A DNA stretch of 64,000 bases, from positions 124,001 to 188,000 of the IMG/VR virus record IMGVR_UViG_3300021964_000012; one strand, written 5' to 3'. Every line of letters starts with the position of its first letter. The stretch's first letter is position 1. The notes beneath the pieces were generated by a model. The model worked only from the letters and a program-made list of their open reading frames with translations. It did no database searches and was not told the DNA's origin. Positions 1,417 to 57,429 of the stretch are shown here, piece after piece. Both the position numbers and the translations under genes were made by a program.

Positions 1417-3711
1417 CTATTCTTGTGTTTCATTGACAGTTACAATACCATTTGTGTCTATGTAAGCATCACTGGGTGAGCCTTTAGGTTTAACATCAAG
1501 TGTTATTCTTGGACGTTTGCCTTTGAACCATACATCAGCAGTTACATGAACATTTTCCAGTTTTTCAAAAAGTATCTTTTTACTTAACGGCACTTTGATA
1601 ATTTCGTCAATCTTTCTGCCCAATGGTCTTGCACCCATTTTAGGATCATATCCAACGTCAACAAGATATTCTACCATTGCTTCTGTTACAATAATATTAA
1701 TATTTTTTTGTTTTAGGTTTGCTCTGAGTTCGTTGATAAACTTTGCAACAATTTTTTTGATTGCAAATGGTTCTAGTGTTTTGAACTTGACTATCAGATC
1801 TAATCTGTTGCGTAGTTCTGGCTTGAAAAAATCTTTTACTGCTTTGTCTTCACTGCCAGTACGTACAAGTTCTTGACCAAATCCAATATTGTTGTTTTCG
1901 TTGTCTCTAGCACCAAGATTTGATGTTAGTATAATAATACAGTTTTTTACATCAACAGTTTTGCCATTTGATCCTGTGATCTTACCTTCGTCCATCATTT
2001 GTAGAAATATGTTTGCTACATCTGGATGGGCTTTTTCAATTTCATCAAACAGCAGGACACTGTAGGGATTTTTACTAACATCTGAAATTAGTTTACCACC
2101 GCTGAGTGTGCTATCATCATAGCCGACAAAACCTGGAGGTGCGCCAAGCAAGCTGCTAACTGTGTGTTTGTCTTGATATTCGCTCATGTCATAACGCAAC
2201 AGATGCATTTCTAAATTGTTGCTCAACAGTTTAGCAAATTCAGTTTTACCTGTACCAGTAGGACCAAGAAATAAAAATGCTCCCATTGGACGATTTGGCG
2301 TGCTTATACCTGCATAGTTTACATAGAGCCTTTCTAGCACTTCGTCTACTACATGATCTTGTCCAAAAAGTTTTTCTTTGATGTTGTTATCTAGATTTTG
2401 TACTTTTTCACTAGCATCGCTCGCCACTTTTGTTTCTGGAATGTTTGCAATTCTTGAAACCTGTTTGTCAATTAAATCTTCTGTAATTACCAAACCTTCT
2501 TGATCTTTAACACGTTCAGTTGCACATGCTCCATCTACTAGGTCTATGCTCTTGTCTGGATTTTTTTTGTCGTGCATGTATCTAGTTGCTAATTCAACTG
2601 CTTTTTCAATGGCGCCTTTGTCTATTGCGACATTGTGAAACTTTTCTAATCTAGGACGCAATCCTTCTAATATCTTTACGGTGGTTTCTTTGTCAGGTTC
2701 ATCTATGCTGACTTTGTAAAAGCGCCTCATCAATGCACGATCTTTTTCAAAACTCTCGTAAAATTCTTCCCAGGTTGTACTTGCAATAACTTTGAGATTG
2801 CCTTTGGTAATTGCAGGTTTGATCATGTTGGAAAAATCCAAACTGCTTCCACCTGTTGAACCAGCACCTTTCATGGTATGTGCTTCGTCTATAAAAAGTA
2901 TACAGTTCTTTTTTGATTCTAAAGCTGAAATAATATCTTTGAGTTTTTCTTCAAATTCGCCACGGTACTTAGAGCCAGCAAGTAGACTGCCTATTTCCAA
3001 ACCCCACACCTCAAAGTTTTTAAGGAACTTTGGTATTTTATTGTCTTTTATTCTAGTTGCCAAGCCTTCTGCAATAGCAGTTTTTCCAACACCTGGATCT
3101 CCTACCATTAATACATTACTTTTAAAACGTTTAGCTAATACTGTAACTATTTCTTCGAGTTCTGTTTCTCGACCAATAACTGGTTCAAGTTTATCGTCTT
3201 TGGCAAGTTTGCTCACATTTATGCAGTGCTCTTCGAGTATTTCATTTGCGGTTGAGATGTCAATTCCGTCTTTGGATTTACCATTATATGTTTGTTGCCA
3301 GTGCATTACAAATTCTTGTTTGACAAGTCCATGTTTCAGCATATAGTAGGCCGCATGACTGTTGGTTTCAGCCATGATTGCTAACCACAGATCAATGGTT
3401 TCCATACTTCGTCTACCACCAAACATAACCTGTGTTAATGCTCTGTTGAAAACTCTTTCAAGTGCATTTGTCTTTTTTGGGTCTCCTTTAACTGGATTGC
3501 TGACCAGCATGGTTTGTGAATCAATATATAATTGTAAATCTGACACAATAGCATCAGAACTGGAACCAAAAGACTCAATGCATCTTTTGAATTTTGGATA
3601 CTGCACCATTGCTAATGTAAGGTGTTCGATTGTCACATAATCGTGTTTCTTGTCTTTCGCAAGTTTATGAGCAGTTGCAAGTATTTGTTCTATTTCAGGA
3701 CTGTGTTGCAT
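1417..3711 (-). CDS. clpA: ClpA-type AAA+ unfoldase
   Basis: Clp N-domain, two Walker A motifs (GDPGVGKT, GPTGTGKT), GSKYRGEFEE pore loop, ClpP-docking IGF loop (NNIGFG), no ClpB M-domain. Confidence 0.92.
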   Translation of the reverse strand: MQHSPEIEQILATAHKLAKDKKHDYVTIEHLTLAMVQYPKFKRCIESFGSSSDAIVSDLQLYIDSQTMLVSNPVKGDPKKTNALERVFNRALTQVMFGGRRSMETIDLWLAIMAETNSHAAYYMLKHGLVKQEFVMHWQQTYNGKSKDGIDISTANEILEEHCINVSKLAKDDKLEPVIGRETELEEIVTVLAKRFKSNVLMVGDPGVGKTAIAEGLATRIKDNKIPKFLKNFEVWGLEIGSLLAGSKYRGEFEEKLKDIISALESKKNCILFIDEAHTMKGAGSTGGSSLDFSNMIKPAITKGNLKVIASTTWEEFYESFEKDRALMRRFYKVSIDEPDKETTVKILEGLRPRLEKFHNVAIDKGAIEKAVELATRYMHDKKNPDKSIDLVDGACATERVKDQEGLVITEDLIDKQVSRIANIPETKVASDASEKVQNLDNNIKEKLFGQDHVVDEVLERLYVNYAGISTPNRPMGAFLFLGPTGTGKTEFAKLLSNNLEMHLLRYDMSEYQDKHTVSSLLGAPPGFVGYDDSTLSGGKLISDVSKNPYSVLLFDEIEKAHPDVANIFLQMMDEGKITGSNGKTVDVKNCIIILTSNLGARDNENNNIGFGQELVRTGSEDKAVKDFFKPELRNRLDLIVKFKTLEPFAIKKIVAKFINELRANLKQKNINIIVTEAMVEYLVDVGYDPKMGARPLGRKIDEIIKVPLSKKILFEKLENVHVTADVWFKGKRPRITLDVKPKGSPSDAYIDTNGIVTVNETQE

Positions 3712-15030: not shown

Positions 15031-15059
15031 ATTATATTATGATTAGCGAGGTAAGTCAA
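15031..15059 (-). promoter_or_regulatory. sigma70-type promoter for the clamp loader
   Basis: TTGACT-17-TATAAT, then AGGAG RBS. Confidence 0.7.
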
Positions 15060-16734
15060 CCAGTTCTGGAAAAACATCTAATAGTTTTACATTGTAGATT
15101 TTATCTCTTTGTTCAATCTCTTTCCAAAATAGTTTAGGATTAAACGTTTCGTTATTGTCCATGGCATGTATAATTGCCATATAACCAGTTGTACTTTTTC
15201 CATAAGGATCAAGTGGGCGTAACCATTCTACATGTTTTTGAAATTTTTCTCGGATTAGATCTTTGAGATACTCAGGAGCAGTTGTAACACGCAGATATTG
15301 CTTGTTGGTTAGTAGGTTCACAATCCATTGGTCAGCATCTATTAATCCTTGCTCTACCCAATTTCGATGAAAGTCTGGCATATGTAATGCGTTCAGAATT
15401 GTAATTGTTGATTGAACATTAAAGAATATATCTGGGCGTTTTTGTTTAATTTGTTTGGTAAAATCGACAATCTTGTCCCAGGTGTATGATCCAGGGCGTA
15501 AATATAACGCACGATCGTATTCAGCATCAAGACTTGCAAATACAATAATATTTTTAAAGTTTTGCCACAACTTAAAAATATCTCTTGAACCTAATCCAGA
15601 ATAAGTCATGTTTGTAATATACATTAGTTTTATATCGTGTCTTTTTTTCTCATCTAGTTTTTCAACAAAATCATATGTTTCTTTCATCATTAAAGGCTCA
15701 CCACCTTCGAATATGATCTGATTAAAATGATCTATATGTTTAAAATATTGTTCTAGTAAATCTGGATTACTTGCTACAAAGGCTTTATCAGGAACAGTCA
15801 TTCCTAGTAACTTTTCCACACTGTAAAGACTACTCGAAAACTTAGTCTGACACATTCTACATTGCAGATTACATAAATTGTTTGGTTTATAGTTCAGTAA
15901 CTTTATTTCAAATTTTTCAAGACTTCCATCATTATTTGTGCTTAAAACACTTGGAAATTCTTGTATGAAGTCTCTATTATAGGCCGTTCTTGCAGTATCA
16001 CCTTTATATTTTTGATCTTTTAAATAGCAAGTTTTACAAGCCTCTAGTTCTTTGCCTTCAAGCATATCAAGTCTAAGTTGGCGTGTATTTTTATTGTTCC
16101 ATATATCTTCAAGAGTTTCGTTGTTTGCATTTCCTAAAGCGGTGTCTGTAGATATGTAACAACAAGGGTTCACCTTATTATCTTGTGTGACATACTGACT
16201 TATCCACGGTAAAACACAAAATGTTTTACTTTCTAAAAATAGGTGCCTTGCTCTATCTGGCAAATTCTCTAAGAGAACACTGTTATTTCCTAGCCCACTA
16301 AAAGTTTGATAGATTGAAATATCTTTATATGTATTTGTATAATCACCTGAAGCTTTGTATAAATTGATTAGCACAGGGTCAACACTTGTGTTTTTATGAA
16401 CCCAAAGATATTCTTCTTCTAAATTAGGATTAGTTGAAATAATAATTGTAAAAAAATTACTAATATCAAGTTCGTTTAACATTGTCTGCACACTTTGTAG
16501 TACAGTGTTAGATTGTAATTCTTTATAAAAATCTTTTGTTATTGTCAATACAATGCGATGGTGTTCTTGATATGTAGTTTTGTAATTTTTTTTTAATTGA
16601 TTATAAAGCTCGAATAGATTATTTTCGTATAAGTCACAATCAATTACATCAAGAACTGTGTATGTTTCTTTTAGTTCATTTATCCATTGTTCTATTGTTG
16701 GGAGATTACTACCTTTGGTAAATGTCAATGGCAT
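15043..16734 (-). CDS. radical SAM protein with SPASM/twitch-like domain
   Basis: CNLQCRMC, GGEP, FCVLPW..PCC, CKTC. Confidence 0.85.
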   Translation of the reverse strand: MPLTFTKGSNLPTIEQWINELKETYTVLDVIDCDLYENNLFELYNQLKKNYKTTYQEHHRIVLTITKDFYKELQSNTVLQSVQTMLNELDISNFFTIIISTNPNLEEEYLWVHKNTSVDPVLINLYKASGDYTNTYKDISIYQTFSGLGNNSVLLENLPDRARHLFLESKTFCVLPWISQYVTQDNKVNPCCYISTDTALGNANNETLEDIWNNKNTRQLRLDMLEGKELEACKTCYLKDQKYKGDTARTAYNRDFIQEFPSVLSTNNDGSLEKFEIKLLNYKPNNLCNLQCRMCQTKFSSSLYSVEKLLGMTVPDKAFVASNPDLLEQYFKHIDHFNQIIFEGGEPLMMKETYDFVEKLDEKKRHDIKLMYITNMTYSGLGSRDIFKLWQNFKNIIVFASLDAEYDRALYLRPGSYTWDKIVDFTKQIKQKRPDIFFNVQSTITILNALHMPDFHRNWVEQGLIDADQWIVNLLTNKQYLRVTTAPEYLKDLIREKFQKHVEWLRPLDPYGKSTTGYMAIIHAMDNNETFNPKLFWKEIEQRDKIYNVKLLDVFPELVDLPR

Positions 16735-17682: not shown

Positions 17683-18156
17683 TTATCTGAGAAATTCACC
17701 AGGGTCTAAATCATAGTACATGCTATCAATCTTGTGTACACCAAGTAGATAAAGCACATAACTTGCAACACTAGATCCTCTGCCTACACCCCATATTATG
17801 TTATTATCTCTCATAGTATCCACAAGATACTTTAAATATTTTAATAAATTAAATAAATTTCTTTCTTGAAACATCAACAGTTCTTCGCCCGCACGTTGTA
17901 TTTCAGCATCTGTCTTACAACAATCAATTACGTGTTGGGCAATATCTAGCTGTTGGTATTCTTCGGGCATTAGCCAATTGCGTTGATTCATCATATCATA
18001 TTCATCAACGCTCAATGATATGTCAGTTTCAGGAACTGTATTTTCTAATTGTACTGTACTATCCACAGTAATACCCGCAGTTGATTTCTCTGTCATTATC
18101 AAATCAACTACGTCTTCTATGTTGTATACTATTTCACTGAATTTATTTTTTATCAT
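17683..18156 (-). CDS. DNA polymerase III alpha (DnaE) fragment, split gene
   Basis: WGVGRGSSVASYVLYLLGVHKID..YDL...FL palm segment; ends before the PDIDID motif. Confidence 0.8.
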   Translation of the reverse strand: MIKNKFSEIVYNIEDVVDLIMTEKSTAGITVDSTVQLENTVPETDISLSVDEYDMMNQRNWLMPEEYQQLDIAQHVIDCCKTDAEIQRAGEELLMFQERNLFNLLKYLKYLVDTMRDNNIIWGVGRGSSVASYVLYLLGVHKIDSMYYDLDPGEFLR

Positions 18157-18784
18157 TAGGTTTAAATTCTACTACATTTTCACCAATGTTGTCAACCTTT
18201 TCGACTTGTTTTTCAAGTTTTACTTCAATCACTGGTTCTTCTGCCTCGCCGTCATCCCAATCTAAATCTAAACTTTTCCATGTAGGATTATTTAATGTAA
18301 CAACTTTTTTACCTGCTTTTGGTATTGTAATACAACCCGGTCCAGTATCTGTCCACCATCCTGTGTTTTCAAATGGGCCTACAGTTTCTTCATCATGATG
18401 CAAATAACTAATACCGCCTCCCATTGTACTTCGTATGCTGATATCAAGTATGTCCATTACATCTTCGGTAACTGCTTGTAGTTTACAATATAATGCTAGG
18501 CCAACTATTTGATCAGCAGGTTCGTCTGGTAACACAATGGTTCGAAAATCTACTTCTTCATATTTTTTAGTAAGGCTTTTGTGTGCTTTACCAAAAATTA
18601 TAGCATCTGAAAACTGTTCATATAAAATATACTTGCATCTTTCCATTGCAATATTTTGATCAACTTGATTTGTTGATTTTGTTATTATTTGTAAATCAAC
18701 ACTATACGTATTCATTATAACTCCAGTGTCAAAGTACACGCCAGTGGTAAATGTTGGACTCCAACCTATTCTTACATAACTCAT
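18143..18784 (-). CDS. hypothetical phage protein
   Basis: 213-aa ORF in a coupled operon. Confidence 0.6.
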   Translation of the reverse strand: MSYVRIGWSPTFTTGVYFDTGVIMNTYSVDLQIITKSTNQVDQNIAMERCKYILYEQFSDAIIFGKAHKSLTKKYEEVDFRTIVLPDEPADQIVGLALYCKLQAVTEDVMDILDISIRSTMGGGISYLHHDEETVGPFENTGWWTDTGPGCITIPKAGKKVVTLNNPTWKSLDLDWDDGEAEEPVIEVKLEKQVEKVDNIGENVVEFKPNDKK

Positions 18785-19490: not shown

Positions 19491-20399
19491 TTATGCAAAA
19501 GCGGCACCGTTGTTACCTATCACAAACCATTTGCTGTTTATGTACATTAGAGTGCATGCTTCGCCAATGTTAGCAAAAGTAATAGTTCCAGTTCCAGATG
19601 CTTTCCATCCTGCATTGGTAACTGTTGTAACCATGTCGCCACTGTCAGCATACATAGCAAGTACTTTAATTTGTCCTTCAACACCTGCAGCCAATGTGCT
19701 TGTTTCAGCAGCCGCTGTTGAAAAATAACTTGCGGTTTTGGTCAAATCAGCGGCGCCAGCATCTGCTAGATCTTCTGAGCCTGTTAATTTTATTGGATTA
19801 GTTAATGTGTCTCTTGGTCTTGTAAGTTCGCTTAGAAATATGCTTGTTCCGCCGTCGTCTGTGTGAAATTGGAATTCATATGTGCCTGTTTCTGCAAATG
19901 TAATAACGTTTGAACTAATGCCTTGTATGCCTACTATGCTTTTTGCACTTACACCGTTTCCTACTGCACTTGGCAGTGTCACAGTGTGAGCTACGTTAGC
20001 AACTGTAATTACAACTGTAATAAATGATTGGTTTCCTGCGGCTGGTATATTTGAAAATGCTAGTGTAATTGATCCTGAAGTTGTTACACTGTACCAGTTA
20101 CCTCCGCTATAATCAATTGCTGCAGAACCTGATATTGCTCCAAGAGCCACTCTAGTTGCTCTATAGCCTTGTATTTTGGTGTTTTTTATTACTGCACCAG
20201 ACATATCGTTATCAAGTGTTGTGCCTGTTAATGCACTTTTAAAAATGCCTTTTGCTTGTAGATCGTCAATTTCAGTCTCTGCATATTCAAAATTGGTTTT
20301 GATGTTTGTGAAGTTATCACGAAATCCTTGACTGTCATTGTCCTGTCCAGCAACTGGATAGGTTGTATCTATGTTGTTTGGATTGATACTACTTGCCAT
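19491..20399 (-). CDS. virion structural protein (tail fibre/baseplate-associated)
   Basis: N-terminal YPVAGQDNDSQGFRDNF; G/T/A/S-rich beta structure; in the structural cluster. Confidence 0.65.
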   Translation of the reverse strand: MASSINPNNIDTTYPVAGQDNDSQGFRDNFTNIKTNFEYAETEIDDLQAKGIFKSALTGTTLDNDMSGAVIKNTKIQGYRATRVALGAISGSAAIDYSGGNWYSVTTSGSITLAFSNIPAAGNQSFITVVITVANVAHTVTLPSAVGNGVSAKSIVGIQGISSNVITFAETGTYEFQFHTDDGGTSIFLSELTRPRDTLTNPIKLTGSEDLADAGAADLTKTASYFSTAAAETSTLAAGVEGQIKVLAMYADSGDMVTTVTNAGWKASGTGTITFANIGEACTLMYINSKWFVIGNNGAAFA

Positions 20400-20413
20400 G
20401 TTTTTATCTCTTT

Positions 20414-23400
20414 CTATGTTCCTAAAATATTCTTCTTGGGGAATACGAGGTATTTATCATATGAATCCGTCTTGCCGTAAACATCTACAGGGCTGGTAAA
20501 CCTTAGACTGTTGCCATCAAAGGTAGTTGGATTTCCACTTGGTGTTGGATTAGCAGTCTGGTCTGTATTAAATGTAGTGCTTAATGGTGGTGATGGATTC
20601 CAATTTCCGCCATCTGTTGAATCTTCATTTGGTACCCAATTTGCAGTAAGTTGATTGTCCAGTATGTATCTATCGCTGATAAAATCAACTCTATTGAGTA
20701 TTTCACCGAACTGTGTGCGAATGTTATAACTTATTCGATCTGATTCACCTGGTTTTGTATAACAAATCACCCATGCTTTAGTAAAGCCTAATACTCTACC
20801 GTTGGTTTGTTTTGATGTCATCCATAAAGGCAATATTGTATTTGTTTGTCCAATTGTATCAACAACCCTGTCTCGCATGTTTATCAAACTGTTTGGGTAA
20901 ACAGTTTGTGTAGTTACTGCAAGTTCGTCAAGTGGTGTTAAAAATTGATCATAAAATGTTAGCAACTGCTCGTAGTGTGCATTTATATCAAGATCACCAG
21001 ACGCTTGTGGTTTTGGAAATATACAAGCAATACCGTTGTTTTCTGGATTGAAAGGATCTGTTGGATTCTTTAATGCATATCCATAGCAACAACAGATTTG
21101 ATGATTTAATCCAGTATCTTTTTTGCCTTTGTCATTTAGATAAAGTGCGTCAAAGTTTATTTCAAGTCCAACATGCACAAATCCCATTGCAATATAAGGC
21201 ACTGTTGGTATGGTATCGTTTATGTTAGTAAGGCGTTTCCATCTATCAACCATTTTATTTCCGTTGATGTCGGTTAGATTGTCAAACCAAGTGCGAAACT
21301 TAAGGTTACCAACTCTTGGACTAGCCGATGGCAATCCTTCAATTTCAAATTTATTCAGACTGACTGCATAAGCACAAACTAGTGTAGCCATTGCACTTCC
21401 TAAACTATGACTGCATATACGTAATTTTGTTTTTGTTGTGTTTTCTAGAGCTTGTTGTAGTGTTATTCCGGGAACATCACTACCTCTTGTGTATCCCGGA
21501 GCAGATGCACTTGCTGGGACACCTAGTCCTTGGAATGCCTTCAGCCAGCCACTTCCAATTTGTCCTTGGCCTAGCGGATTATCAACTTTATTGGCCGCAT
21601 CAACATCTAGTTTAACATTGCCTTCTCCCAATGTACCACGAATTACAATATAAGCATGATCACCTTGTTCAACTAGAAAGGCAAAAGGTTCAATATACCT
21701 TTGTACATTGCCATTTTCTTCCTTACCGGTGTAGTATTCACTATAGATAATGTTATTTGCAAGTGCTGCGGCTTCCAGTTGTGTTTTAAAAAGGTCGTAT
21801 CTAACATTATCACTATAGGTATCACACTCGTTCCTAGGTGACCATGTAAAAGTTCCTGATGGGTCATCGCCTGCAGGATCTCCCGGGCTTCCGGCAGCGG
21901 CCCAATCTTTTGACATTTGGCTGGCAACAGTCGCTAGTAAGTTTGCATTAAGTGCTGGTTCTAGATAGTCAACGCCTTGATTAGCTAATCCTACTTTAGC
22001 AGTGATTGTTTCGTTACTCAGTCTGTCTGGGTGATCAACACCGTCTACTGTTAATTCTACTGGCCATTTTATACTCTGGGGCGGCGATTGCCCTAGTTTA
22101 TTAACGCCGGTATCAATAACATCACTATAAACAACTTCATATTCGACAGTACCATCTGCGTTCAATGCTTGTGCAGTTTTTATTTCCCCTAGTATCAGTT
22201 TCTTTTCAAAATGATTCTGTGTAAGTGCATTTACATATTCTTCTAGTGTTGCAGTATCTAAACTGTAGGCATGATTATACACTACATTTTTTGCCACACC
22301 AAAGTAGGGATCATCTGCTCGATAAACTCTTGATGGCGGTATTATGTCAGTGTTTTGAATTAGACTTCTTATAAAAGTTCTATCATTTTGATCAGGCATT
22401 GCTTTGATATAGATTCCGTTGTATGGAGAATTGTACTCTCTATCTACAGTGATACGGAACGTTCTACTAACACTAACCAAGCCGTCACTGCTGTATGCAA
22501 CCACAGTGAAGTCAAATGCTTTATCAAATGTTGTTTCTCCACTTATTAATCTTGTGCTAACTTCTTTATCAAAAGTGGTTGTTCCGCTATCAATTGCAAA
22601 GGTATTAAAACTAACACGCCCACTGATGTTTCCGCTTGATAGTAACTCTAATCCCTGAGGTAGAAGATTGTATTGTCCAGGAGTATCTGGATAACTGCCT
22701 GCTTTCAATTTGAATTGTAGTGTCCGTCCGCTTGGGTTTGAGGCTTTTACTGCTAGTCTTGATACTGCACCGTTATCGATTGTTCCTAGTGAATATACAG
22801 GTGCTAGTTCAGTACCAGGAACAAAAGTTCCTGTCAACCAAGTAACCGCATTCTCTATGTTTCCTATGACAGTAATATTGTAATCATAGGGTTCACTTTG
22901 AACTTCAGGACGATTTGCTTTGGCAATAATAATGCTAAAGTTAAATGTTTGTTCAGTTGCACCTTGATCTGGAAAATAACCACTTAACCATCCTGTTAGT
23001 GTATTAAATGTTATGCCCGGAGGAAGGTCGCTACTATCGCCAGTTACAATTGAAAATTCAATTGGATCATTATCGCAATCAAATCCTTTGATTTGATAGG
23101 CAAAGAAGTTATCATGTCTAAATGTTCCGATTGTTCCGGCAGATACTGCCGGAGGTCCAACAATAGCAGGTGGATAGTTTTCAATATATGGTGTGCTGAG
23201 TGGCGATAGATCAGCAGTTAGTATGTCAGTGTCAGCAGTGAAATCGAGTGTATCCGCAGTTAAACTATCTCTACTTACTACATACATTGTAAATGTTCTT
23301 AGATTTTGATCTTTACCATCACTGATTCTCAGTGTAAATTCATAGTTTTTGTTTATACTTCTGTTTGGAAAATCAAACGGATATAGATCAAATGCACTAG

Positions 23401-23950
23401 CATCAAAGCCGCTCGTAGCACTGTCTGGTAGATTGCTTATTGGTGATATGTGACCAGATATCAATCCGGTTGTTGCATTTAGTGTTAACCCAGGTGGCAA
23501 TTCACCGTTATCAACTTCGATAGTAACTGTATCATTTGGATCACTGTCTGTAAACCCAATTGTGATGTTTACATTATCACAGTCAAAAAATGTACCCAAA
23601 CTACCAGCCGGTGTTGTGAAAGTAGGTGCGTCCTGCCCAGTGACTGTTAGGCTAAATGTTCTATCATTGATACTCAATCCATCTGGCGAGGTTGCACGTA
23701 TTGCAAAAGTGCTTGTTACATTTTCACTGACTTCGGTCGGTGTTCCTCTCAGCGTCACAAAGGCTTGCGGGACACCTTCAATCAGTCCGTTTGATGTTAC
23801 TTGAACACCTTCTGGAAGTCTGCCAGCAATTAAAGTATATGTAAGTGTACCGCCGTCTGGATCAACGGCTTCTATTGGTCTTTGGAAAAATAAATTTTCT
23901 GCAATAGTTCCAAGATCTCCTGCTGGTGTTACCCATACTGGTTGTGCCAT
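20414..23950 (-). CDS. large Ig/cadherin-repeat virion protein (baseplate wedge-like) with an internal class-3 lipase domain
   Basis: Repeated LPxGLxL..G.ISG Ig-like units; internal IRGT, SHSLG, SPRVGN, DTIPTVP and NH motifs. Confidence 0.7.
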   Translation of the reverse strand: MAQPVWVTPAGDLGTIAENLFFQRPIEAVDPDGGTLTYTLIAGRLPEGVQVTSNGLIEGVPQAFVTLRGTPTEVSENVTSTFAIRATSPDGLSINDRTFSLTVTGQDAPTFTTPAGSLGTFFDCDNVNITIGFTDSDPNDTVTIEVDNGELPPGLTLNATTGLISGHISPISNLPDSATSGFDASAFDLYPFDFPNRSINKNYEFTLRISDGKDQNLRTFTMYVVSRDSLTADTLDFTADTDILTADLSPLSTPYIENYPPAIVGPPAVSAGTIGTFRHDNFFAYQIKGFDCDNDPIEFSIVTGDSSDLPPGITFNTLTGWLSGYFPDQGATEQTFNFSIIIAKANRPEVQSEPYDYNITVIGNIENAVTWLTGTFVPGTELAPVYSLGTIDNGAVSRLAVKASNPSGRTLQFKLKAGSYPDTPGQYNLLPQGLELLSSGNISGRVSFNTFAIDSGTTTFDKEVSTRLISGETTFDKAFDFTVVAYSSDGLVSVSRTFRITVDREYNSPYNGIYIKAMPDQNDRTFIRSLIQNTDIIPPSRVYRADDPYFGVAKNVVYNHAYSLDTATLEEYVNALTQNHFEKKLILGEIKTAQALNADGTVEYEVVYSDVIDTGVNKLGQSPPQSIKWPVELTVDGVDHPDRLSNETITAKVGLANQGVDYLEPALNANLLATVASQMSKDWAAAGSPGDPAGDDPSGTFTWSPRNECDTYSDNVRYDLFKTQLEAAALANNIIYSEYYTGKEENGNVQRYIEPFAFLVEQGDHAYIVIRGTLGEGNVKLDVDAANKVDNPLGQGQIGSGWLKAFQGLGVPASASAPGYTRGSDVPGITLQQALENTTKTKLRICSHSLGSAMATLVCAYAVSLNKFEIEGLPSASPRVGNLKFRTWFDNLTDINGNKMVDRWKRLTNINDTIPTVPYIAMGFVHVGLEINFDALYLNDKGKKDTGLNHQICCCYGYALKNPTDPFNPENNGIACIFPKPQASGDLDINAHYEQLLTFYDQFLTPLDELAVTTQTVYPNSLINMRDRVVDTIGQTNTILPLWMTSKQTNGRVLGFTKAWVICYTKPGESDRISYNIRTQFGEILNRVDFISDRYILDNQLTANWVPNEDSTDGGNWNPSPPLSTTFNTDQTANPTPSGNPTTFDGNSLRFTSPVDVYGKTDSYDKYLVFPKKNILGT

Positions 23951-23960
23951 CTGGACCTAC

Positions 23961-26201
23961 CTATAATTTCAACATACACTCGACGAGCTTTTCACCTTCG
24001 TCTGCGTTATCTTCAAGTGCAATACCTATCAAGTGTCCTTCTGAGTTCTTACTTGCTCTTCCCATGATGTCAGAATACACCAGTTGTCCTTTTTGCACTG
24101 ATCCAAAAATTCTTACTGGAACACGACCAACTAAAGCCACCGGTAAACCAGCTGTTAAATCACTGTTCATGAGATATGCTGGATCAGTTGAGATAACTCC
24201 AGCTGGATAATCTCCTAAACCACATATAGTGATTTCGAGAGGACCACCAATTGATATCACTGTACCTGGATCATAATCATGATCTGAAAGATAGTTTTCT
24301 GCTAAGTCAGCATATCTTGCTTGAGTTGCAGTTAGTGTGGCTATATTAGCACTAAAACTAGCATTGCTATCTCTAAAAATTATTGTACTAGGCGTACTAG
24401 CATCAGTAGCATTTGATGCTACAGTAAATGTACCACTTTCGCTGTTAACACTACCACTAATACCGTTTCCTGAAGTTGCTCCTTGTTGGACATAAGCCCC
24501 TGTTGTATCTGTGCCTAAAGCGACTGAATCGGCTGCAATTGTTGTAGCAAATGATACATTACCTAAATTGGTCATTGTACCTGAACCAGTAACATCACCC
24601 GTTAGAGTAATTGTTGGATCAGCAGTTAGTGTTGTCGCAATACTTGCAGTATCGCCTGCGTTGGTAAATGTGGCACTGCCTGTTACGTTTCCTGTTAGTT
24701 GCACGGTTACCGCACTTGATAAACCACCAGCAGTACCTGTTGTGTTTTGGTTAAGTGTTGCCACCCTAGCGGCAGCAACTGTACCTGTTGTTATATTTGA
24801 TCCATTTAAAGCACTCAATAATGCACCTGATCCAGCAAAGGATGCGGCAGTTATATTGCCTGTTGCATCTACGTCGCCAGCTGTAGTAATGTTGCCACCA
24901 CTTACATTGCCTGTGGCCGAAATAGTTGTACCTGCTGTTATTCCATTTGTAGCGTCAACATTGTCAGCCTGTACCTGTCCTGTAGTAGTAACGTTACCAC
25001 CACTTACGTTACCAGTTGCTGATATTGTTGTACCAGCAGTAATGCCATTGGTTGCGGCAAAGTTGTCACCTGCCACTTGACCAGTTGCACTGATTATACC
25101 AGTTACTGCTGAGCCAGTTGATCCAACATCCAAAACTGTTGTACCAGCAACACCTACTGTTGTATTTGCATTATTTGCAACAAATACATTTGATGTTCCA
25201 TTTACTATTGTATTTGCGTTAGGTAGGTTTGATAATTGACTTCCGTCGCCAAGTATATAGGTACCTGAAATATTACCTGTTGCAGTGATGTTTGCAGTTG
25301 TCATTGGAACTATAACGTCAATTGTGGTTCCGTCAGTTTGAAATACCAGTGTTCCACCTGATGTGATTTCTACATTACCACCTGAACTTGAAATACCAAC
25401 AATCGATGTTCCGTTGGCAATTTGTGTAACTGCTACGTTTGATGCTGCTGTAACGTTGGATAAAAATCCTCCGTCGCCAATAAAAAATCCGCCAGTGCTT
25501 TCTACATTTCCTGTTGCACTCATGTCACCTGTTGCAACAACACCTGAGCTGTTTACATTGCCTGCATCTACGTTTCCTGTAGCAGTAACTGAACCTCCAG
25601 TGATAATGTTACCACCAGTGACGTTGCCTGTTGCGTCAACAAATCCTGAAGTAATTAGATTACCAGCAGTAACATTTCCTGTGGTTACTTTGTTACCACC
25701 AATAACAACATCATTTAGTGCTATGATGTTTCCGCCTTGGACGTTTCCTCCACTTGTAATGTTGCCAGTGGCATCAATAATAACACTGTTAACTTCTTGG
25801 TATCTTAGTGTGCTGTTTCCAAGATATCTTGTTGCATTTGTATCAGGAAGTAAATTTGAACCAATTGTACCATTCACAATCAGTTGATCGCCAATGGTAA
25901 AATCTTGTGTAATAGTTAAACTGTTTCCAACATCAAGGTCAGTTGCAATGGTTACGTTTCCACTAATGCTTGTTTCTGTTCCAGAAAATGTAACCACATT
26001 AGAACTTCCAGCAATGCTAATAGTCACATTAGCACTGTCAGCAACAGACACATTTGAAGTACCGTTTATAATTTCTGTTGGAGTGATAGTAGTGTCAAAA
26101 AGTGATTTGAAGTTATCATTACATTTAATGTATGCAGTTCTTAGGCCGTCACCGGTACCATCGTTTGCGGTTGCACCAACATTGATTATTTCTCTTGCCA
26201 T
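23961..26201 (-). CDS. tail fibre protein with GNVTGGN-type repeats and C-terminal chaperone-like domain
   Basis: N-terminal INVGATANDGTGDGLR; low-complexity G/N/T/V repeats; C-terminal ARYADLAENY...GVIST.PAYLMN...GRVPV. Confidence 0.75.
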   Translation of the reverse strand: MAREIINVGATANDGTGDGLRTAYIKCNDNFKSLFDTTITPTEIINGTSNVSVADSANVTISIAGSSNVVTFSGTETSISGNVTIATDLDVGNSLTITQDFTIGDQLIVNGTIGSNLLPDTNATRYLGNSTLRYQEVNSVIIDATGNITSGGNVQGGNIIALNDVVIGGNKVTTGNVTAGNLITSGFVDATGNVTGGNIITGGSVTATGNVDAGNVNSSGVVATGDMSATGNVESTGGFFIGDGGFLSNVTAASNVAVTQIANGTSIVGISSSGGNVEITSGGTLVFQTDGTTIDVIVPMTTANITATGNISGTYILGDGSQLSNLPNANTIVNGTSNVFVANNANTTVGVAGTTVLDVGSTGSAVTGIISATGQVAGDNFAATNGITAGTTISATGNVSGGNVTTTGQVQADNVDATNGITAGTTISATGNVSGGNITTAGDVDATGNITAASFAGSGALLSALNGSNITTGTVAAARVATLNQNTTGTAGGLSSAVTVQLTGNVTGSATFTNAGDTASIATTLTADPTITLTGDVTGSGTMTNLGNVSFATTIAADSVALGTDTTGAYVQQGATSGNGISGSVNSESGTFTVASNATDASTPSTIIFRDSNASFSANIATLTATQARYADLAENYLSDHDYDPGTVISIGGPLEITICGLGDYPAGVISTDPAYLMNSDLTAGLPVALVGRVPVRIFGSVQKGQLVYSDIMGRASKNSEGHLIGIALEDNADEGEKLVECMLKL
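24882..25067 (-). repeat. tandem 34-codon intragenic duplication in the tail fibre
   Basis: ATNGITAGTTISATGNVSGGN(V/I)TT occurs twice with synonymous divergence. Confidence 0.7.
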
Positions 26202-26243: not shown

Positions 26244-26705
26244 TTAGTTAAGATCGACCCAAGAAGAACCAGTGTATCCTTGAAATTTTGTTCCGCTAGT
26301 CACAAAGATTATCATGCCAGCAACAGGAGAAGTGATAGCGGCATCTCTAGCAGTAGCATCGGCGTAGGTTGGAAGAGTAAATGGGCCACTGCTTATCACT
26401 CCAACAGTGCCGATATATGCACCCAATGGACGTACATTAGCATTACCAATGTATCTTGTATTGTTAGCATCAGGAATAACATCTTGTGCTATACGTATTG
26501 TGCCTGTACCGTCTGGTGCAAGAACTATATCACCATTGGTATTATAACTTGAAATAGTTTGCCCATTCATTGCAATGTTGGAACTTACACTATTGGCTCC
26601 GTAGAGTTCAGTGAAATTATCGTTGACTTTGTCCATTGCACTACGGAGATTGTCACCGGTACCGTCGTTTGCTGATGTTCCTAAATTGATTGTTTGCTGT
26701 GCCAT
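26244..26705 (-). CDS. short baseplate/tail-fibre-like protein
   Basis: INLGTSANDGTGDNLR..KVNDNFTELY (T4 gp9/gp10-like N-terminal motif); CATAAATA upstream. Confidence 0.7.
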   Translation of the reverse strand: MAQQTINLGTSANDGTGDNLRSAMDKVNDNFTELYGANSVSSNIAMNGQTISSYNTNGDIVLAPDGTGTIRIAQDVIPDANNTRYIGNANVRPLGAYIGTVGVISSGPFTLPTYADATARDAAITSPVAGMIIFVTSGTKFQGYTGSSWVDLN

Positions 26706-35761: not shown

Positions 35762-37315
35762 ATGCGAATATTAGTACTAGGAAATAACACAAAAGATACT
35801 GACGATCAAGTCAAAGAGCTTGCAGAGAAGGCTGGTACATATAATCACGGGCTCGTTGAAACAACAGATCAAGATTTCTCACAACACGGATATTACCACA
35901 CCACATTAATAGATTTATCACCTGGTGAAATAATGAAATTTGTACACCAGTTTGATGAAGTGATGGTGTTAGATCAACCAGCAAGGAGTTGGGATAGTCA
36001 AAAGCCAAGACTTAGCACCTATAAGTTGATCACTTCCCTAGAAAGACAGAGCAATAGACTAGGTCTTAAAGTTAGCGGTACTGATAATGACAGTTTTGTT
36101 GATATGAAGTATTGGACAGATTTGTTCAAATCAAATCGAAGTTTTTGTGCTTATCCATGGATAGTACATAGTCAAGACAAGGTTGATGCTAATAAATTAA
36201 ATCTTTGTGCTCGAAGTTCGCACGAAGTCACTTCATTAAAAGATCTTGGCAACTGGCAAACAAATCCTGCCTTTACAAAAATTAGAGAAAAAATGAAACG
36301 TGGCGAAAAACTTCCAGGCACATGTCGTGTATGTTACAAATACGAAGATCGTGGATTAACAGGATATAGAACACACGACAGCCTAGACTGGATTGCACGT
36401 TTAGGACTAAAAAATATTAAAGATTTTGACAAGATAGATAGTCCGTATTATTATGAGCTTAGACTTAGTAACCGATGCAACCTAATGTGTCGAATGTGTA
36501 CACCTCAACACAGTCATCTACTAAAGCAGGAGTTTGAAGAAAATCCTGGTTTGGTCAATAGTGGCCAGATGGACGATCCAACCCAAAGTTGGACAGATAC
36601 CGGTGTAGTTGACATAGAAAAATTAACATCTAAACATAAAGTTTACCTAACCGGCGGTGAGCCAATTATTATGCATGAAGTCTATGCATTCATGCGACAA
36701 TGCATAGACTTAAGAAAAACTGATTTTCTTTTTACCCTTGGAACAAATGCTCAACGATTAAATCCATTGTTCTTAAATCTTGCTAGTAAATTTAGCAATA
36801 TGCACTTCAGTGTAAGTATTGATGGTTATGGAAAAGTAAATGATTATATAAGATGGAAAAGTGATTTTGATACCATAATTAAAAATTGTCATATTCTAAT
36901 CAATCAAGGACACCAAATAACATGGAATCATGTTCCAACCATATGGGGAGTACATCGAACACACGAATTGTTTGAATACGTCAGCGAACATTTTCCTAAG
37001 GTTCCTCTCTATTTACAATACAATCGTGTTGAAATTACCAGTGCATTTAAAAGTCCGCTCATTGAGGAGACAATCGAAAGCATGGAACGATGTAAAAAAA
37101 CAATATTGTACACTAGTGACGGCAAAGACTGTACCAGTGGAATTGATGCTTTTTATGATCACTATAGTAGATATAAAGTTAACAAAGATGATTTAAAAAA
37201 GTTTTTTACATGGAATGATTTAATGGACAAAGCCAGAAATATATCAATGGCAGATTATATCCCAGAGCTAGACAGATGCAGAACAATGCTAGAGGTGAAC
37301 CAGAATGCAATTTGA
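35762..37315 (+). CDS. radical SAM protein with SPASM/twitch-like domain
   Basis: CNLMCRMC, GGEP, FCAYPW, CRVC, SIDG. Confidence 0.85.
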   Translation: MRILVLGNNTKDTDDQVKELAEKAGTYNHGLVETTDQDFSQHGYYHTTLIDLSPGEIMKFVHQFDEVMVLDQPARSWDSQKPRLSTYKLITSLERQSNRLGLKVSGTDNDSFVDMKYWTDLFKSNRSFCAYPWIVHSQDKVDANKLNLCARSSHEVTSLKDLGNWQTNPAFTKIREKMKRGEKLPGTCRVCYKYEDRGLTGYRTHDSLDWIARLGLKNIKDFDKIDSPYYYELRLSNRCNLMCRMCTPQHSHLLKQEFEENPGLVNSGQMDDPTQSWTDTGVVDIEKLTSKHKVYLTGGEPIIMHEVYAFMRQCIDLRKTDFLFTLGTNAQRLNPLFLNLASKFSNMHFSVSIDGYGKVNDYIRWKSDFDTIIKNCHILINQGHQITWNHVPTIWGVHRTHELFEYVSEHFPKVPLYLQYNRVEITSAFKSPLIEETIESMERCKKTILYTSDGKDCTSGIDAFYDHYSRYKVNKDDLKKFFTWNDLMDKARNISMADYIPELDRCRTMLEVNQNAI

Positions 37316-55859: not shown

Positions 55860-56762
55860 TTATCCATTGTTGCAATTCCTTCTGGTGTTTATACAATGAA
55901 ACATAAAACGTCTGCGATACGTAGATGTTTCTATTTGTTTTTTATTAAAAGTGCAATTTTTTTGCCAACTCCAATGTTGTATATACCATCCATAATAATC
56001 TAATACCTGTACCCAAAAAGGTAGGTTAGTCTCTACACGTAAACACGGTAAATTTTCTTGCCAACCAGTTCCGCCATAATGATAGCCATCATCAAAATAA
56101 TGCACAAGCATTGGTTCTTTGTGATTATAACTCTTATCGTTGATGCACTCGAACATCGGTAAGCCTCTTATTTGGTCAGTGATTAATATATCTTTTACAC
56201 CTGCACGATTGACATTCTTGAAAAATTCAACATGACAATTGGTCCAACTTAGACATTGAAAGGCACACACAGTATCAAATTGTTGTAGATAATCTACAGT
56301 CAAATTGTTTACATCTTTTACTTCAAATTTAACTTTGCTTTTAAAATGCGTTTTAATTTTATTGCAAATATCAATGTTTTCTGCATGCACATCTGCTGCG
56401 GTTACAGTTTTTGCACCTAGTTTTTCCATAACAAAAGCAAGGTCACCATTACCGCAACCTATGTCTAGTACATGTTTTCCTTTGAAACATTCTGCATAAG
56501 GAAGTAATTGTGTACCTGCTTCTATATAAGCTCTGTATTCTTTGGGATAGTTGCCAAACATTTCATCTTGCCCTGCTTCTAAACTACCAAGTCTTTTGAT
56601 GTCATATGGTGCTATTCGCAAGGACTTACGATTGTATAAACTTTCTGTAAAGTCAAAATAACCAGTTGGCCACAGATCGTTTGCAGTGTCCTGATCTATA
56701 TCAAGCACTGTTTCTGGTTCTCTTATTAGGTCATACACAAATATGTCTTCGAGGGACTTCAT
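55860..56762 (-). CDS. class I SAM-dependent transferase (CmoB-like)
   Basis: FKGKHVLDIGCGNG, FDTV; coupled to the cmoA-like gene. Confidence 0.7.
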   Translation of the reverse strand: MKSLEDIFVYDLIREPETVLDIDQDTANDLWPTGYFDFTESLYNRKSLRIAPYDIKRLGSLEAGQDEMFGNYPKEYRAYIEAGTQLLPYAECFKGKHVLDIGCGNGDLAFVMEKLGAKTVTAADVHAENIDICNKIKTHFKSKVKFEVKDVNNLTVDYLQQFDTVCAFQCLSWTNCHVEFFKNVNRAGVKDILITDQIRGLPMFECINDKSYNHKEPMLVHYFDDGYHYGGTGWQENLPCLRVETNLPFWVQVLDYYGWYIQHWSWQKNCTFNKKQIETSTYRRRFMFHCINTRRNCNNG

Positions 56763-57427: not shown

Positions 57428-57429
57428 TG

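What the first reader, a model, noticed from the sequence alone, without database searches (positions are those of the whole stretch)
20920..22060. Class-3 lipase domain inside a large Ig-repeat virion protein
Seen: within the 1178-aa protein, a segment has the ordered lipase-3 motifs IRGT, SHSLG (Ser about 849), SPRVGN, DTIPTVP (Asp about 912), FVHVG and NH (His about 950), followed by CCC. It is flanked by structural-type sequence in the baseplate/fibre cluster. Known: virion-associated enzymes are usually peptidoglycan hydrolases or depolymerases. Inference: a baseplate-displayed (phospho)lipase or esterase acting on the outer membrane during entry, gained as an in-frame insertion.
Basis: partly seen in the sequence, partly recalled or inferred. 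Interest (0 to 1): 0.72.

Follow-up and report, generated by a model that had tools for sequence, protein, structure and literature searches.

The report
Lipase cassette nested in phage fibre protein
A marine jumbo phage carries an apparently active class-3 lipase/esterase domain spliced into a loop of a long Ig-repeat protein that is probably part of the virion, and close relatives have it, lack it or carry a swapped version, so it looks like an exchangeable tool for attacking the host envelope.

Summary
The 1178-aa ORF (window 20414-23950, minus strand) has a Pfam Lipase_3 match (E 6.5e-14). All the listed motifs are present: Ser849, Asp912, His950. An AlphaFold model of the segment matches plant phospholipase A1, fungal lipases and feruloyl esterase at Z about 23.

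The segment is a true in-frame insert. A homologue 91% identical in the shared parts has 14 codons where the window has 1164 nt (20907-22070). Among 134 homologues this site holds either 2-15 residues or a 370-450-residue lipase. Ser/Asp/His are invariant in all complete copies. dN/dS is about 0.1.

Core and insert trees disagree: core 95% with insert 46%, and core 59% with a near-identical insert. So the cassette is shuffled by recombination and repeatedly lost.

Virion location is indirect. The Atu_ph07 homologue of the scaffold (gp329, with an S8 protease instead) was detected in virions. Neighbouring genes carry T4 gp9/gp10-type N-termini. XacN1 packages a related stand-alone class-3 lipase.

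The substrate, the host and a role at entry are inferred only. Verdict: a new variant of a known but little-studied kind, the virion-associated lipase/esterase.

The parts
20414..23950 (-). Whole gene, 1178 aa (P0001): an Ig-repeat scaffold with a nested lipase
   Evidence: ORF list and translation. Pfam gives He_PIG and Lipase_3. The same gene sits in the same synteny in relatives.
22436..23950 (-). Residues 1-505: about five tandem He_PIG / cadherin-like beta-sandwich domains forming the stalk
   Evidence: Pfam He_PIG x3. The full-length model is all-beta here. Foldseek PDB hits are cadherin ectodomains.
22071..22420 (-). Residues about 511-627: N-terminal half of the conserved alpha/beta domain that hosts the insert
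   Evidence: Model secondary structure. Conserved in all homologues, including Phosso gp119.
20907..22070 (-). The in-frame insert (1164 nt, residues about 628-1015): linker, N-terminal helices and the class-3 lipase fold
   Evidence: Replaced by 42 nt in the lipase-less relative L002. P0015 joins residue 641 directly to 642. The site is bimodal across 134 homologues. GC and GC3 equal the flanks.
21191..21652 (-). Pfam Lipase_3 match, residues 767-920
   Evidence: E 6.5e-14, 52.5 bits. Whole-genome scan gives 57.4 bits.
21404..21406 (-). Ser849 codon: predicted nucleophile in SHSLG (GHSLG in the other insert types)
   Evidence: Invariant in all 52 insert-bearing sequences. Aligns with Ser133 of feruloyl esterase A inside GHSLG.
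21215..21217 (-). Asp912 codon: predicted triad acid in NDTIP
   Evidence: Invariant. Aligns with the ND-G-IP Asp of feruloyl esterase A and with the GDIVP Asp of Yarrowia Lip2.
21101..21103 (-). His950 codon: predicted triad base in NHQIC, at the start of a helix
   Evidence: Invariant. It lies inside the structurally aligned range, model residues 27-362.
20600..20906 (-). Residues 1016-1117: C-terminal half of the host alpha/beta domain (VYPNSLINMRD ... LPLWMTSKQ ... DRYILD)
   Evidence: 97% identical to P0015 residues 642-756. Conserved motifs recur in Phosso gp119. Model.
20530..20561 (-). Second variable site, empty in this phage. Relatives carry inserts of about 100, 165, 210 or 300 aa here.
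   Evidence: L002 has 929 nt here against 32 nt in the window. Length classes. No Pfam family found in these inserts.
20417..20527 (-). Residues 1142-1178: conserved C-terminal tail, predicted disordered in the monomer
   Evidence: 100% identical to the P0015 C-terminus. Conserved family-wide. pLDDT below 50.
23961..26201 (-). Upstream neighbour, 746 aa: fibre-like protein with a gp9/gp10-type N-terminus
   Evidence: phrog_677, phrog_356 and phrog_19602. The C-terminus matches a PA5oct virion structural protein / 'tail pin'. Weak PF07880 match.
26244..26705 (-). Upstream neighbour, 153 aa, with a T4 gp9/gp10 N-terminal domain
   Evidence: PF07880 at 26.9 bits and phrog_677 at E 2.3e-16.
19491..20399 (-). 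Downstream neighbour, 302 aa. Its N-terminal 52 aa resemble Atu_ph07 gp328, a virion protein.
   Evidence: 46% identity, E 1e-10. gp328 was detected in the Atu_ph07 virion MS. The gene is also present next to lipase-less homologues.

Best explanation
The gene encodes a long, probably virion-borne fibre-like protein of an uncultured marine/estuarine jumbo myovirus (328 kb, distantly Atu_ph07/PA5oct-like).

Architecture: about five cadherin-like Ig domains form a stalk. A conserved C-terminal alpha/beta domain follows. In the model, a complete class-3 lipase domain of about 370 aa is spliced between two strands of that domain (627-635 before it, 1012-1017 after).

Activity: the lipase is most likely catalytically active, with Ser849-Asp912-His950 and the RG(T) oxyanion motif. 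Most likely it hydrolyses an ester bond in the host cell envelope when the particle adsorbs. Candidate substrates are outer-membrane glycerolipid or lipid A acyl esters, or an acylated surface polymer. This would locally loosen or remodel the surface ahead of baseplate docking and penetration.

Evolution: the domain appears to have been captured once from a pool of stand-alone phage lipase genes. It has since diversified into at least four types. It behaves as a cassette that homologous recombination swaps between related phages and deletes precisely.

Shown: fold, motifs, insertion, selection and shuffling. Inferred: virion location, from homologues and neighbours. Inferred without direct evidence: the substrate and the timing of action.
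For: Domain identity:
- Lipase_3 at E 6.5e-14.
- Model pLDDT 84, pTM 0.85.
- Foldseek E 1e-10 to plant PLA1.
- VIA Z 23.4 (7x0c), 23.1 (4tgl) and 22.8 (feruloyl esterase A), with 220-277 aligned residues.

Likely activity:
- Ser, Asp and His are invariant in every copy complete across them (51 of 52; the 52nd is cut after Ser), and R-G, H-S-L-G, D and H are invariant in the 37-sequence alignment, whose members are only 33-47% identical to the query outside its own insert type.
- dN/dS is 0.09-0.11 in the insert at dS about 0.46.

Insertion:
- P0015 (91% identical) and P0084 lack exactly this block.
- At DNA level 1164 nt stand against 42 nt.
- The site is bimodal in 134 homologues.
- In the full model the insert lies between strands 627-635 and 1012-1017 of the host domain.

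Shuffling and loss:
- The lipase label needs at least 8 changes on the core tree, 6 of them forced by supported branches.
- Core and insert identities disagree: 95/46 (P0004), 82/96 (P0003) and 59 with a near-identical insert (P0042).
- Nested inserts form one clade (99), next to stand-alone lipases and XacN1 ORF279.

Virion link:
- Phosso gp119 and Atu_ph07 gp329 share the core (hhalign 99.5%, E 2e-22).
- gp329, gp328 and gp327 are in the Atu_ph07 virion MS table (PMC6102473).
- Flanking genes carry gp9/gp10-type N-termini.
- XacN1 ORF279 is a stand-alone Lipase_3 reported in virions.

The gene is real and probably expressed:
- It occurs in at least 16 DNA runs.
- Independent contigs bridge both junctions.
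- Metatranscriptome contigs lie inside the insert.
Against: - No proteomic or structural evidence exists for this phage.
- The Atu_ph07 homologue was seen with only 3 peptides (2% coverage), and it carries a protease rather than a lipase.
- The core has no PHROG, Pfam (beyond He_PIG) or PDB sequence relative, so its place in the particle is unknown.
- The canonical baseplate gene (gp25-like) is about 143 kb away.
- The host is unidentified, so 'outer membrane' is an assumption.
- The class-3 fold includes feruloyl esterase, a carbohydrate esterase, and catalytically dead members such as EDS1/PAD4, so fold alone does not fix the substrate.
- The query's insert type has SHSLG rather than GHSLG.
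- Triad geometry could not be measured, because model coordinates are not exposed.
- RNA-library contigs may derive from DNA.
Confidence: 0.6

Rival explanations
1. The domain is virion-borne and active, but it is a carbohydrate/surface-polymer esterase rather than a membrane lipase. It would be a receptor-modifying deacylase acting on O-acylated capsule, EPS or O-antigen, like the acetyl-esterase tailspikes.
For: Feruloyl esterase A, a carbohydrate esterase, is among the best sequence and structure matches. Known virion esterases mostly deacetylate polysaccharide (review PMC5380687). The scaffold has further variable sites typical of receptor-binding proteins, and one relative's site-2 insert gives a weak CBM_5_12 hint.
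Against: The top structural match, with the longest alignment, is phospholipase A1 (277 residues). No carbohydrate-binding module is present in this protein. The enzymes known for this role belong to other families (SGNH/GDSL).
Confidence: 0.22
2. The protein is not a virion component. The lipase acts from within the cell, late in infection: envelope disruption at lysis (LysB-like), or remodelling of host lipids.
For: Phage lipolytic enzymes with proven roles are mostly lysis factors, for example mycobacteriophage LysB and the lysis-cassette GDSL lipase in PMC12173070. Genes downstream are metabolic or replication genes. There is no direct virion evidence.
Against: A 630-aa stalk of Ig repeats with a conserved tail is not what a lysis enzyme looks like. 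There is no signal peptide or transmembrane segment at the N-terminus (sequence), and no holin or endolysin was found nearby. The homologous scaffold was found in Atu_ph07 virions. Both neighbours have fibre-type N-termini.
Confidence: 0.1
3. The domain is a catalytically inert lipase-like module used only for binding or as a structural spacer, as in the plant EDS1/PAD4 lipase-like domains.
For: EDS1-family lipase-like domains appear among the structural matches at Z about 18. The query's type has a non-canonical SHSLG elbow.
Against: Ser, Asp, His and the R-G and H-S-L-G residues are invariant across insert types, in an alignment whose members are as little as 33% identical to the query. dN/dS is about 0.1. 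Small residues such as Ser or Ala at the -2 elbow position are tolerated in alpha/beta hydrolases (general knowledge).
Confidence: 0.05

Closest known systems
Xanthomonas jumbo phage XacN1 ORF279 'lipase' (phrog_21992)
   Same: It is a class-3 lipase (PF01764, 45 bits) in a jumbo myovirus and was reported packed in virions by proteomics. phrog_21992 is the only PHROG that the insert hits. It falls in the same broad clade as the nested inserts (support 93, but on a long branch).
   Different: ORF279 is a stand-alone 237-aa protein near the capsid gene, not nested in a larger protein. It lacks the N-terminal helical extension of about 100 aa. tblastn finds no similarity. Its activity and role are untested.
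Agrobacterium phage Atu_ph07 gp329 and Sinorhizobium phage Phosso gp119 ('S8 family peptidase')
   Same: They share the scaffold: He_PIG repeats plus the C-terminal alpha/beta domain with the DPYFG, YPNS..R and LPLWM motifs (hhalign 99.5%). The neighbourhood is similar, with a fibre-type gene downstream and, in Atu_ph07, MazG and a pol III alpha fragment in the same part of the gene list. gp329 was detected in virions. They also carry a hydrolase.
   Different: The hydrolase is a subtilisin-like S8 protease fused at the N-terminus, not a lipase nested in the C-terminal domain. Site 1 is empty in Phosso gp119. Identity to the query is about 23-27%.
Class-3 (Lipase_3) lipases: plant phospholipase A1 (AtDSEL 7x0c, 2yij), Rhizomucor/Thermomyces lipases, Aspergillus feruloyl esterase A
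   Same: They share the fold (Z 22-23), the order RG(T/S) ... GHSLG ... D ... H, and a His at the start of a helix.
   Different: Identity is 14-20%. These are eukaryotic secreted or cytosolic stand-alone enzymes. The phage domain is an internal insert. It has its own conserved Cys residues (C709, C953) and a PGDPA/W..P.N.C region. The lid and the substrate are unknown.
Other virion-associated esterases/lipases: Staphylococcus phi11 Gp44 (Tal, endopeptidase plus lipase/esterase), Vibrio phage Peru-2 P2_42 (GDSL), predicted lipases of Cellulophaga phages, acetyl-esterase tailspikes
   Same: These are ester hydrolases carried on or in the particle and presumed to act on the envelope at infection.
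   Different: Those whose family the cited papers give (Peru-2 P2_42) are GDSL. They are terminal domains or separate proteins, not nested. None is reported as a presence/absence cassette. Most are uncharacterised.
Mycobacteriophage LysB and lysis-cassette lipases
   Same: They are phage-encoded lipolytic serine hydrolases that target the outer lipid layer of the envelope.
   Different: They are soluble lysis proteins expressed late, not structural. They belong to the cutinase or GDSL families and sit in a lysis cassette.

Membership tests
Pfam PF01764 Lipase_3 (class-3 lipase, alpha/beta hydrolase) | HMM score above the curated gathering threshold | tested here: met
   52.5 bits against a cut-off of 22, E 6.5e-14, profile positions 1-138 of 140. 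The genome scan gives 57.4 bits.
Pfam PF01764 Lipase_3 (class-3 lipase, alpha/beta hydrolase) | Alpha/beta-hydrolase fold of the class-3 type | tested here: met
   Model pLDDT 84. Foldseek probability 1.00 to PLA1, feruloyl esterase A and fungal lipases. VIA Z 19-23 with 220-277 aligned residues at rmsd 2.4-3.7.
Pfam PF01764 Lipase_3 (class-3 lipase, alpha/beta hydrolase) | Nucleophile elbow G-H-S-L-G carrying the catalytic Ser | tested here: met
   SHSLG at 847-851. H-S-L-G is invariant in 37 diverse inserts. The first residue is G in most types and S in the query's type. It aligns with GHSLG of feruloyl esterase A and Lip2.
Pfam PF01764 Lipase_3 (class-3 lipase, alpha/beta hydrolase) | Catalytic Asp and His in the order Ser-Asp-His, plus the RG(T/S) oxyanion motif | tested here: met
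   Asp912, His950, Arg771 and Gly772 are invariant. The Asp aligns with the catalytic Asp region of feruloyl esterase A and Lip2.
Pfam PF01764 Lipase_3 (class-3 lipase, alpha/beta hydrolase) | Triad residues in hydrogen-bonding geometry | not testable with these tools
   The model's coordinates are not exposed to scripts. Only the fold-level superposition is available.
Pfam PF01764 Lipase_3 (class-3 lipase, alpha/beta hydrolase) | Carboxylic-ester hydrolase activity | not testable with these tools
   This needs a biochemical assay. Purifying selection (dN/dS about 0.1) is only indirect support.
Virion-associated envelope-degrading enzymes of tailed phages | Protein present in purified virions | not testable with these tools
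   The phage is uncultured. Indirect support: the scaffold homologue Atu_ph07 gp329 was detected with 3 peptides, and the XacN1 lipase ORF279 was reported in virions.
Virion-associated envelope-degrading enzymes of tailed phages | Encoded within a tail / fibre / baseplate gene module | tested here: inconclusive
   Both flanks are fibre-like genes with gp9/gp10-type N-termini. However, the islet lies among replication and metabolic genes, and the gp25-like gene is about 143 kb away.
T4 gp9/gp10 baseplate-periphery proteins (PF07880) | gp9/gp10 N-terminal attachment domain | tested here: not met
   There is no PF07880 or phrog_677 match in P0001. The genome scan finds it only in the two upstream neighbours.
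Atu_ph07 gp329 / Phosso gp119 scaffold family (unnamed) | He_PIG repeats followed by the conserved C-terminal alpha/beta domain (DPYFG ... YPNS..R ... LPLWM ... DRY) | tested here: met
   hhalign probability 99.5%, E 2e-22 over 443 columns. The motifs are visible in the P0140 sequence. BFVD rank 4 is the Atu_ph07 protein.
phrog_21992 phage esterase/lipase (XacN1 ORF279 family) | Significant HMM match over most of the profile | tested here: inconclusive
   E 5.3e-4, 20.8 bits, covering profile positions 97-184 of 213 only. The tree groups the two with support 93, but ORF279 sits on a long branch.

The most novel reading that the evidence does not exclude
The scaffold is a modular 'enzyme and ligand display' fibre of marine jumbo phages with several hot spots: an N-terminal fusion, site 1, site 2 and a C-terminal extension. 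The lipase cassette at site 1 would be a host-range or adsorption determinant under an arms race. Phages more than 90% identical in the core coexist as lipase-plus, lipase-minus and different-lipase forms because the enzyme helps on some envelopes. It might also free particles from lipid decoys such as membrane vesicles, while being costly or detectable on other hosts.
Probability: 0.3. Interest if true: 0.72.

Novelty: new variant of a known kind. Interest (0 to 1): 0.55.

Why it matters
Virion enzymes that breach the envelope are well studied for peptidoglycan and polysaccharide. For lipids they are almost unstudied: virion lipases have been predicted, or seen in proteomes, without any functional test.

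This case offers a clean natural experiment. The same structural protein occurs in near-identical marine phages with the lipase, without it, or with a divergent lipase. The catalytic residues are strictly conserved. That makes a long-standing question directly testable: do tailed phages of Gram-negative bacteria use lipolysis at the outer membrane during adsorption or entry?

It also shows domain nesting and cassette exchange as a route of tail-protein evolution in jumbo phages. Finally, it provides a compact, self-folding lipase module that is already adapted to display on a particle.

Tried and rejected
Searches that found nothing useful:
- megablast and tblastn of the gene and of the insert against 50,697 cultured-phage records gave no close relative. 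The whole protein gave only a weak Phosso hit, and the insert gave none.
- A profile of the whole family against PDB sequences gave no match for the core.
- PHROGs gave nothing for the core.
- An ESM-Atlas feature search of the lipase-less C-terminal domain gave no usable hit.
- Foldseek of the full-length model returned only cadherin/Ig repeats (PDB) and uncharacterised phage proteins (BFVD).
- Pfam on site-2 inserts and C-terminal extensions of relatives gave nothing, apart from a sub-threshold CBM_5_12 hint.
- A word-based search for stand-alone relatives of the insert found only a fragment. The exhaustive profile search was needed.
- A host search with the phage's nucleotide-sugar dehydrogenase against 185,579 genomes gave no relative, so the host remains unknown.

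Checks that argued against alternative readings:
- Foreign-origin signal: GC and GC3 of the insert equal the flanks, so there is no sign of recent acquisition from a distant source.
- Exact lipase-less allele in the same samples: the joints reported by read laying do not match the expected junction. Only the higher depth on the core than on the insert hints at co-occurring variants.
- Assembly chimera: rejected.
- Alternative genetic code: not needed, because the ORF is open under table 11.

Not done:
- No complex prediction was run, because no specific binding claim is made.
Full report
**What is there.** The window is part of a 328,292-bp virus record with direct terminal repeats, GC about 37%. 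The finding lies in one ORF, window 20414-23950 on the minus strand, 1178 aa.

- IRGT at 770
- SHSLG at 847 (Ser849)
- SPRVGN at 877
- DTIPTVP at 912 (Asp912)
- FVHVG at 924
- NH at 949-950 (His950)
- CCC at 953-955

Pfam gives Lipase_3 for residues 767-920 (E 6.5e-14, 52.5 bits against a cut-off of 22). It also gives three He_PIG Ig-like domains (E 3.7e-18). Sequence search of the PDB finds feruloyl esterase A and fungal or plant class-3 lipases. The alignments place Ser849 on the GHSLG serine and Asp912 on the catalytic Asp region.

**Fold.** I aligned 37 insert-bearing homologues (A1). AlphaFold2 on residues 625-1029 gave pLDDT 84 and pTM 0.85. Only the two ends that belong to the host protein were disordered.
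- Foldseek against the PDB returns only class-3 lipase-fold proteins at the top: plant phospholipase A1 AtDSEL at E 1.4e-10, then feruloyl esterase A and fungal lipases.
- VIA-align gives Z 23.4 (7x0c, 277 residues aligned), 23.1 (Rhizomucor lipase 4tgl) and 22.8 (feruloyl esterase A).

**It is an insertion.**
- P0015 is 91% identical over residues 1-640. It then runs straight into the sequence that follows residue 1015 of the query (97% identity) and ends with the identical 37-residue tail.
- The 888-aa orthologue on a 331-kb phage contig does the same.
- At DNA level, window 20907-22070 (1164 nt) is replaced by 42 nt in the P0015 locus. Both flanks align at 86%.
- In a MAFFT alignment of 134 homologues the site is cleanly bimodal: 2-15 residues, or 370-450 residues that are always a lipase. 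Three truncated fragments fall in between.
- Both halves of the short linker (ITLPYPVT | SQ.ITTVYPNSL) are kept on either side of the insert in most types.
- The full-length model (pLDDT 75) shows about five beta-sandwich domains (1-505), then a mixed alpha/beta domain. Its strands 627-635 and 1012-1017 flank the lipase. The C-terminal tail is disordered.
- GC and GC3 of the insert equal the flanks.

**Is it functional?**
- Ser, Asp and His are present in every copy that is complete across them.
- R-G of the oxyanion motif, H-S-L-G, Asp and His are invariant across the alignment, whose members are only 33-47% identical to the query outside its own type.
- Against the P0002 locus, dN/dS is 0.11 for the insert and 0.089 for the lipase fold proper, at dS about 0.46. 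The core gives 0.04-0.05.
- The query's type has Ser instead of Gly at the first elbow position. Small residues there are tolerated in alpha/beta hydrolases (general knowledge).

**Evolution.**
- On a tree of the core (123 rows, insert columns removed), the lipase label needs at least 8 changes, 6 of them forced by well-supported branches. One clade of 46 rows has 40 lipase-bearing members and 6 nested lipase-less ones. A deep clade and one isolated row (P0042) also carry the lipase.
- Core and insert histories disagree strongly:

| Homologue | Core identity to query | Insert identity to query |
|---|---|---|
| P0004 | 95% | 46% |
| P0003 | 82% | 96% |
| P0042 | 59% | 45%, but nearly identical to the insert of P0019/P0005 |

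- An exhaustive profile search of 1.84 billion representatives finds stand-alone relatives of 280-440 aa (E 1e-54 to 1e-69). At least one of them lies on phage-like contigs.
- In a joint tree, 16 of 17 nested inserts form one clade (support 99). That clade sits beside these stand-alone proteins and XacN1 ORF279 (support 93; ORF279 is on a long branch).
- The simplest history is one capture of a stand-alone phage lipase gene, then diversification into at least four types, exchange by homologous recombination through the conserved flanks, and repeated precise loss.
- The scaffold has further variable places: a second internal site holding nothing or about 100, 165, 210 or 300 aa, and an optional C-terminal extension of 166-203 aa. 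No Pfam family was found in either.

**Is it a virion protein?** There is no direct evidence for this uncultured phage. The indirect evidence is as follows.
1. Sinorhizobium phage Phosso gp119 and Agrobacterium phage Atu_ph07 gp329 share the scaffold (hhalign 99.5%, E 2e-22; the DPYFG, YPNS..R and LPLWM motifs). They carry an N-terminal S8 protease instead of a lipase. In the Atu_ph07 virion ESI-MS/MS table, gp329 is listed with 3 peptides at 2.08% coverage, next to gp328, gp327 (tail fibre) and gp326. The gene list shows the same neighbourhood with MazG and a pol III alpha fragment (PMC6102473).
2. The two upstream genes carry the T4 gp9/gp10 N-terminal domain and fibre-like PHROGs. One C-terminus matches a PA5oct virion protein. 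The N-terminus of the downstream 302-aa gene matches that of Atu_ph07 gp328.
3. XacN1 ORF279 is a stand-alone Lipase_3 protein (45 bits; phrog_21992 at E 9e-82). It was reported packed in XacN1 virions, and phrog_21992 is the only PHROG the insert hits.

Against this, the core has no named relative. P0001 itself lacks the gp9/gp10 domain. The only gp25-like gene is about 143 kb away. 'Baseplate-displayed' is therefore too specific. 'Fibre-like virion protein at the tail periphery' is the defensible wording.

**Reality and ecology.** The gene is present at 0.84-0.99 of sampled words in 16 DNA runs from marine, estuary and seawater metagenomes, from at least 14 studies dated 2018-2025. It is partly present in marine and salt-marsh metatranscriptomes. 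Independent contigs bridge both junctions, and metatranscriptome contigs lie inside the insert. DNA carry-over in those RNA libraries cannot be excluded. In one run the depth on the core is two to three times that on the insert, which hints at co-occurring variants. The host could not be identified.

**Mechanism and rivals.**
- Best reading (0.6): an active class-3 lipase/esterase displayed on a fibre-like virion protein, which hydrolyses an ester in the host envelope at adsorption. Phospholipase A1 is the longest structural match, but the substrate is not fixed by fold.
- Rival (a), 0.22: a surface-polymer esterase.
- Rival (b), 0.1: a non-virion, lysis-type or metabolic role.
- Rival (c), 0.05: an inert binding module.

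**Comparison and novelty.** Virion-associated lipases and esterases are known as predictions or proteome hits: Cellulophaga phages, phi11 Gp44, Peru-2 P2_42 and XacN1 ORF279. They lack functional work. Full-text searches found no report of a class-3 lipase in a phage virion protein under those terms.

What is new here:
- the nesting of a complete class-3 lipase inside a conserved structural protein;
- its behaviour as a swappable, losable cassette among near-identical marine jumbo phages;
- the kinship of the scaffold with the protease-bearing proteins of Atu_ph07 and Phosso.

I rate it a new variant of a known kind, with interest 0.55.

Noticed in passing
window 20530-20561 (site 2) and the C-terminus at 20414-20416; relatives P0015, P0084, P0112, P0090, P0078, P0006, P0124: The scaffold family has two further variable places. 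One is a second internal site holding nothing or about 100, 165, 210 or 300 aa. The other is an optional C-terminal extension of 166-203 aa after the conserved tail. None of these pieces matches a Pfam family, except a sub-threshold CBM_5_12 hint in P0078.
   Followed up: partly
L005:3661-7524 (Phosso gp119, P0140); L006:5276-9031 (Atu_ph07 gp329): Cultured relatives carry the same scaffold with a subtilisin-like S8 protease fused at the N-terminus. The records call them 'S8 family peptidase' and 'extracellular serine proteinase precursor', and the Atu_ph07 paper's gene table files gp329 under post-translational modification. They are more likely virion fibre proteins that display a protease.
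   Followed up: partly
L012:5215-6219, L013, L014: A stand-alone 334-aa relative of the insert (P0145) lies immediately after, and co-oriented with, a 621-aa GP88-family protein. The contigs are phage-like and also carry UvdE, QueE-like radical SAM, NifU and SET genes. This may be the kind of gene from which the cassette was captured.
   Followed up: partly
window 17683-18156 (and perhaps 18143-18784): A 157-aa ORF matches only a small piece of DNA polymerase III alpha (PF07733 positions 22-93). The same short gene is conserved in relatives (173 aa in L003) and in Atu_ph07 (534 nt). It looks like a split or fragmentary pol III alpha gene kept as a separate ORF.
   Followed up: no
window 15043-16734 and 35762-37315: There are two large radical SAM proteins. 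The first has a SPASM domain placed N-terminal to the radical SAM core (residues 173-237 against 284-443), which is an unusual order.
   Followed up: no
window 55860-58446 and 61661-62905: This cluster holds a CmoA-like carboxy-SAM synthase, an adjacent CmoB/UbiG-like methyltransferase (possibly tRNA cmo5U modification), a UvdE UV-damage endonuclease and a nucleotide-sugar dehydrogenase. All score below the equivalog cut-offs.
   Followed up: no
window 1417-3711: A 764-aa ClpA-like double-AAA+ ATPase is about 40% identical to those of Phosso, Atu_ph07 and PA5oct. This places the phage near that jumbo-phage supergroup.
   Followed up: partly
window 20000-24400 in run X4: Summed contig depth is about 300-480 on the conserved parts of the gene but a flat 140 across the insert. 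This suggests co-occurring variants that share the core but not this insert. No contig with the exact lipase-less junction was seen.
   Followed up: partly
P0001 residues 709, 953-955 and about 983 (window about 21002-21826): Cys709 and Cys953 are conserved in at least 90% of inserts, whereas the second and third Cys of 'CCC' vary (CCC, CCA, CGA, CCT). A Cys before FP (about residue 983) is common. These may form disulfides or bind a metal next to the catalytic His. Not examined.
   Followed up: no
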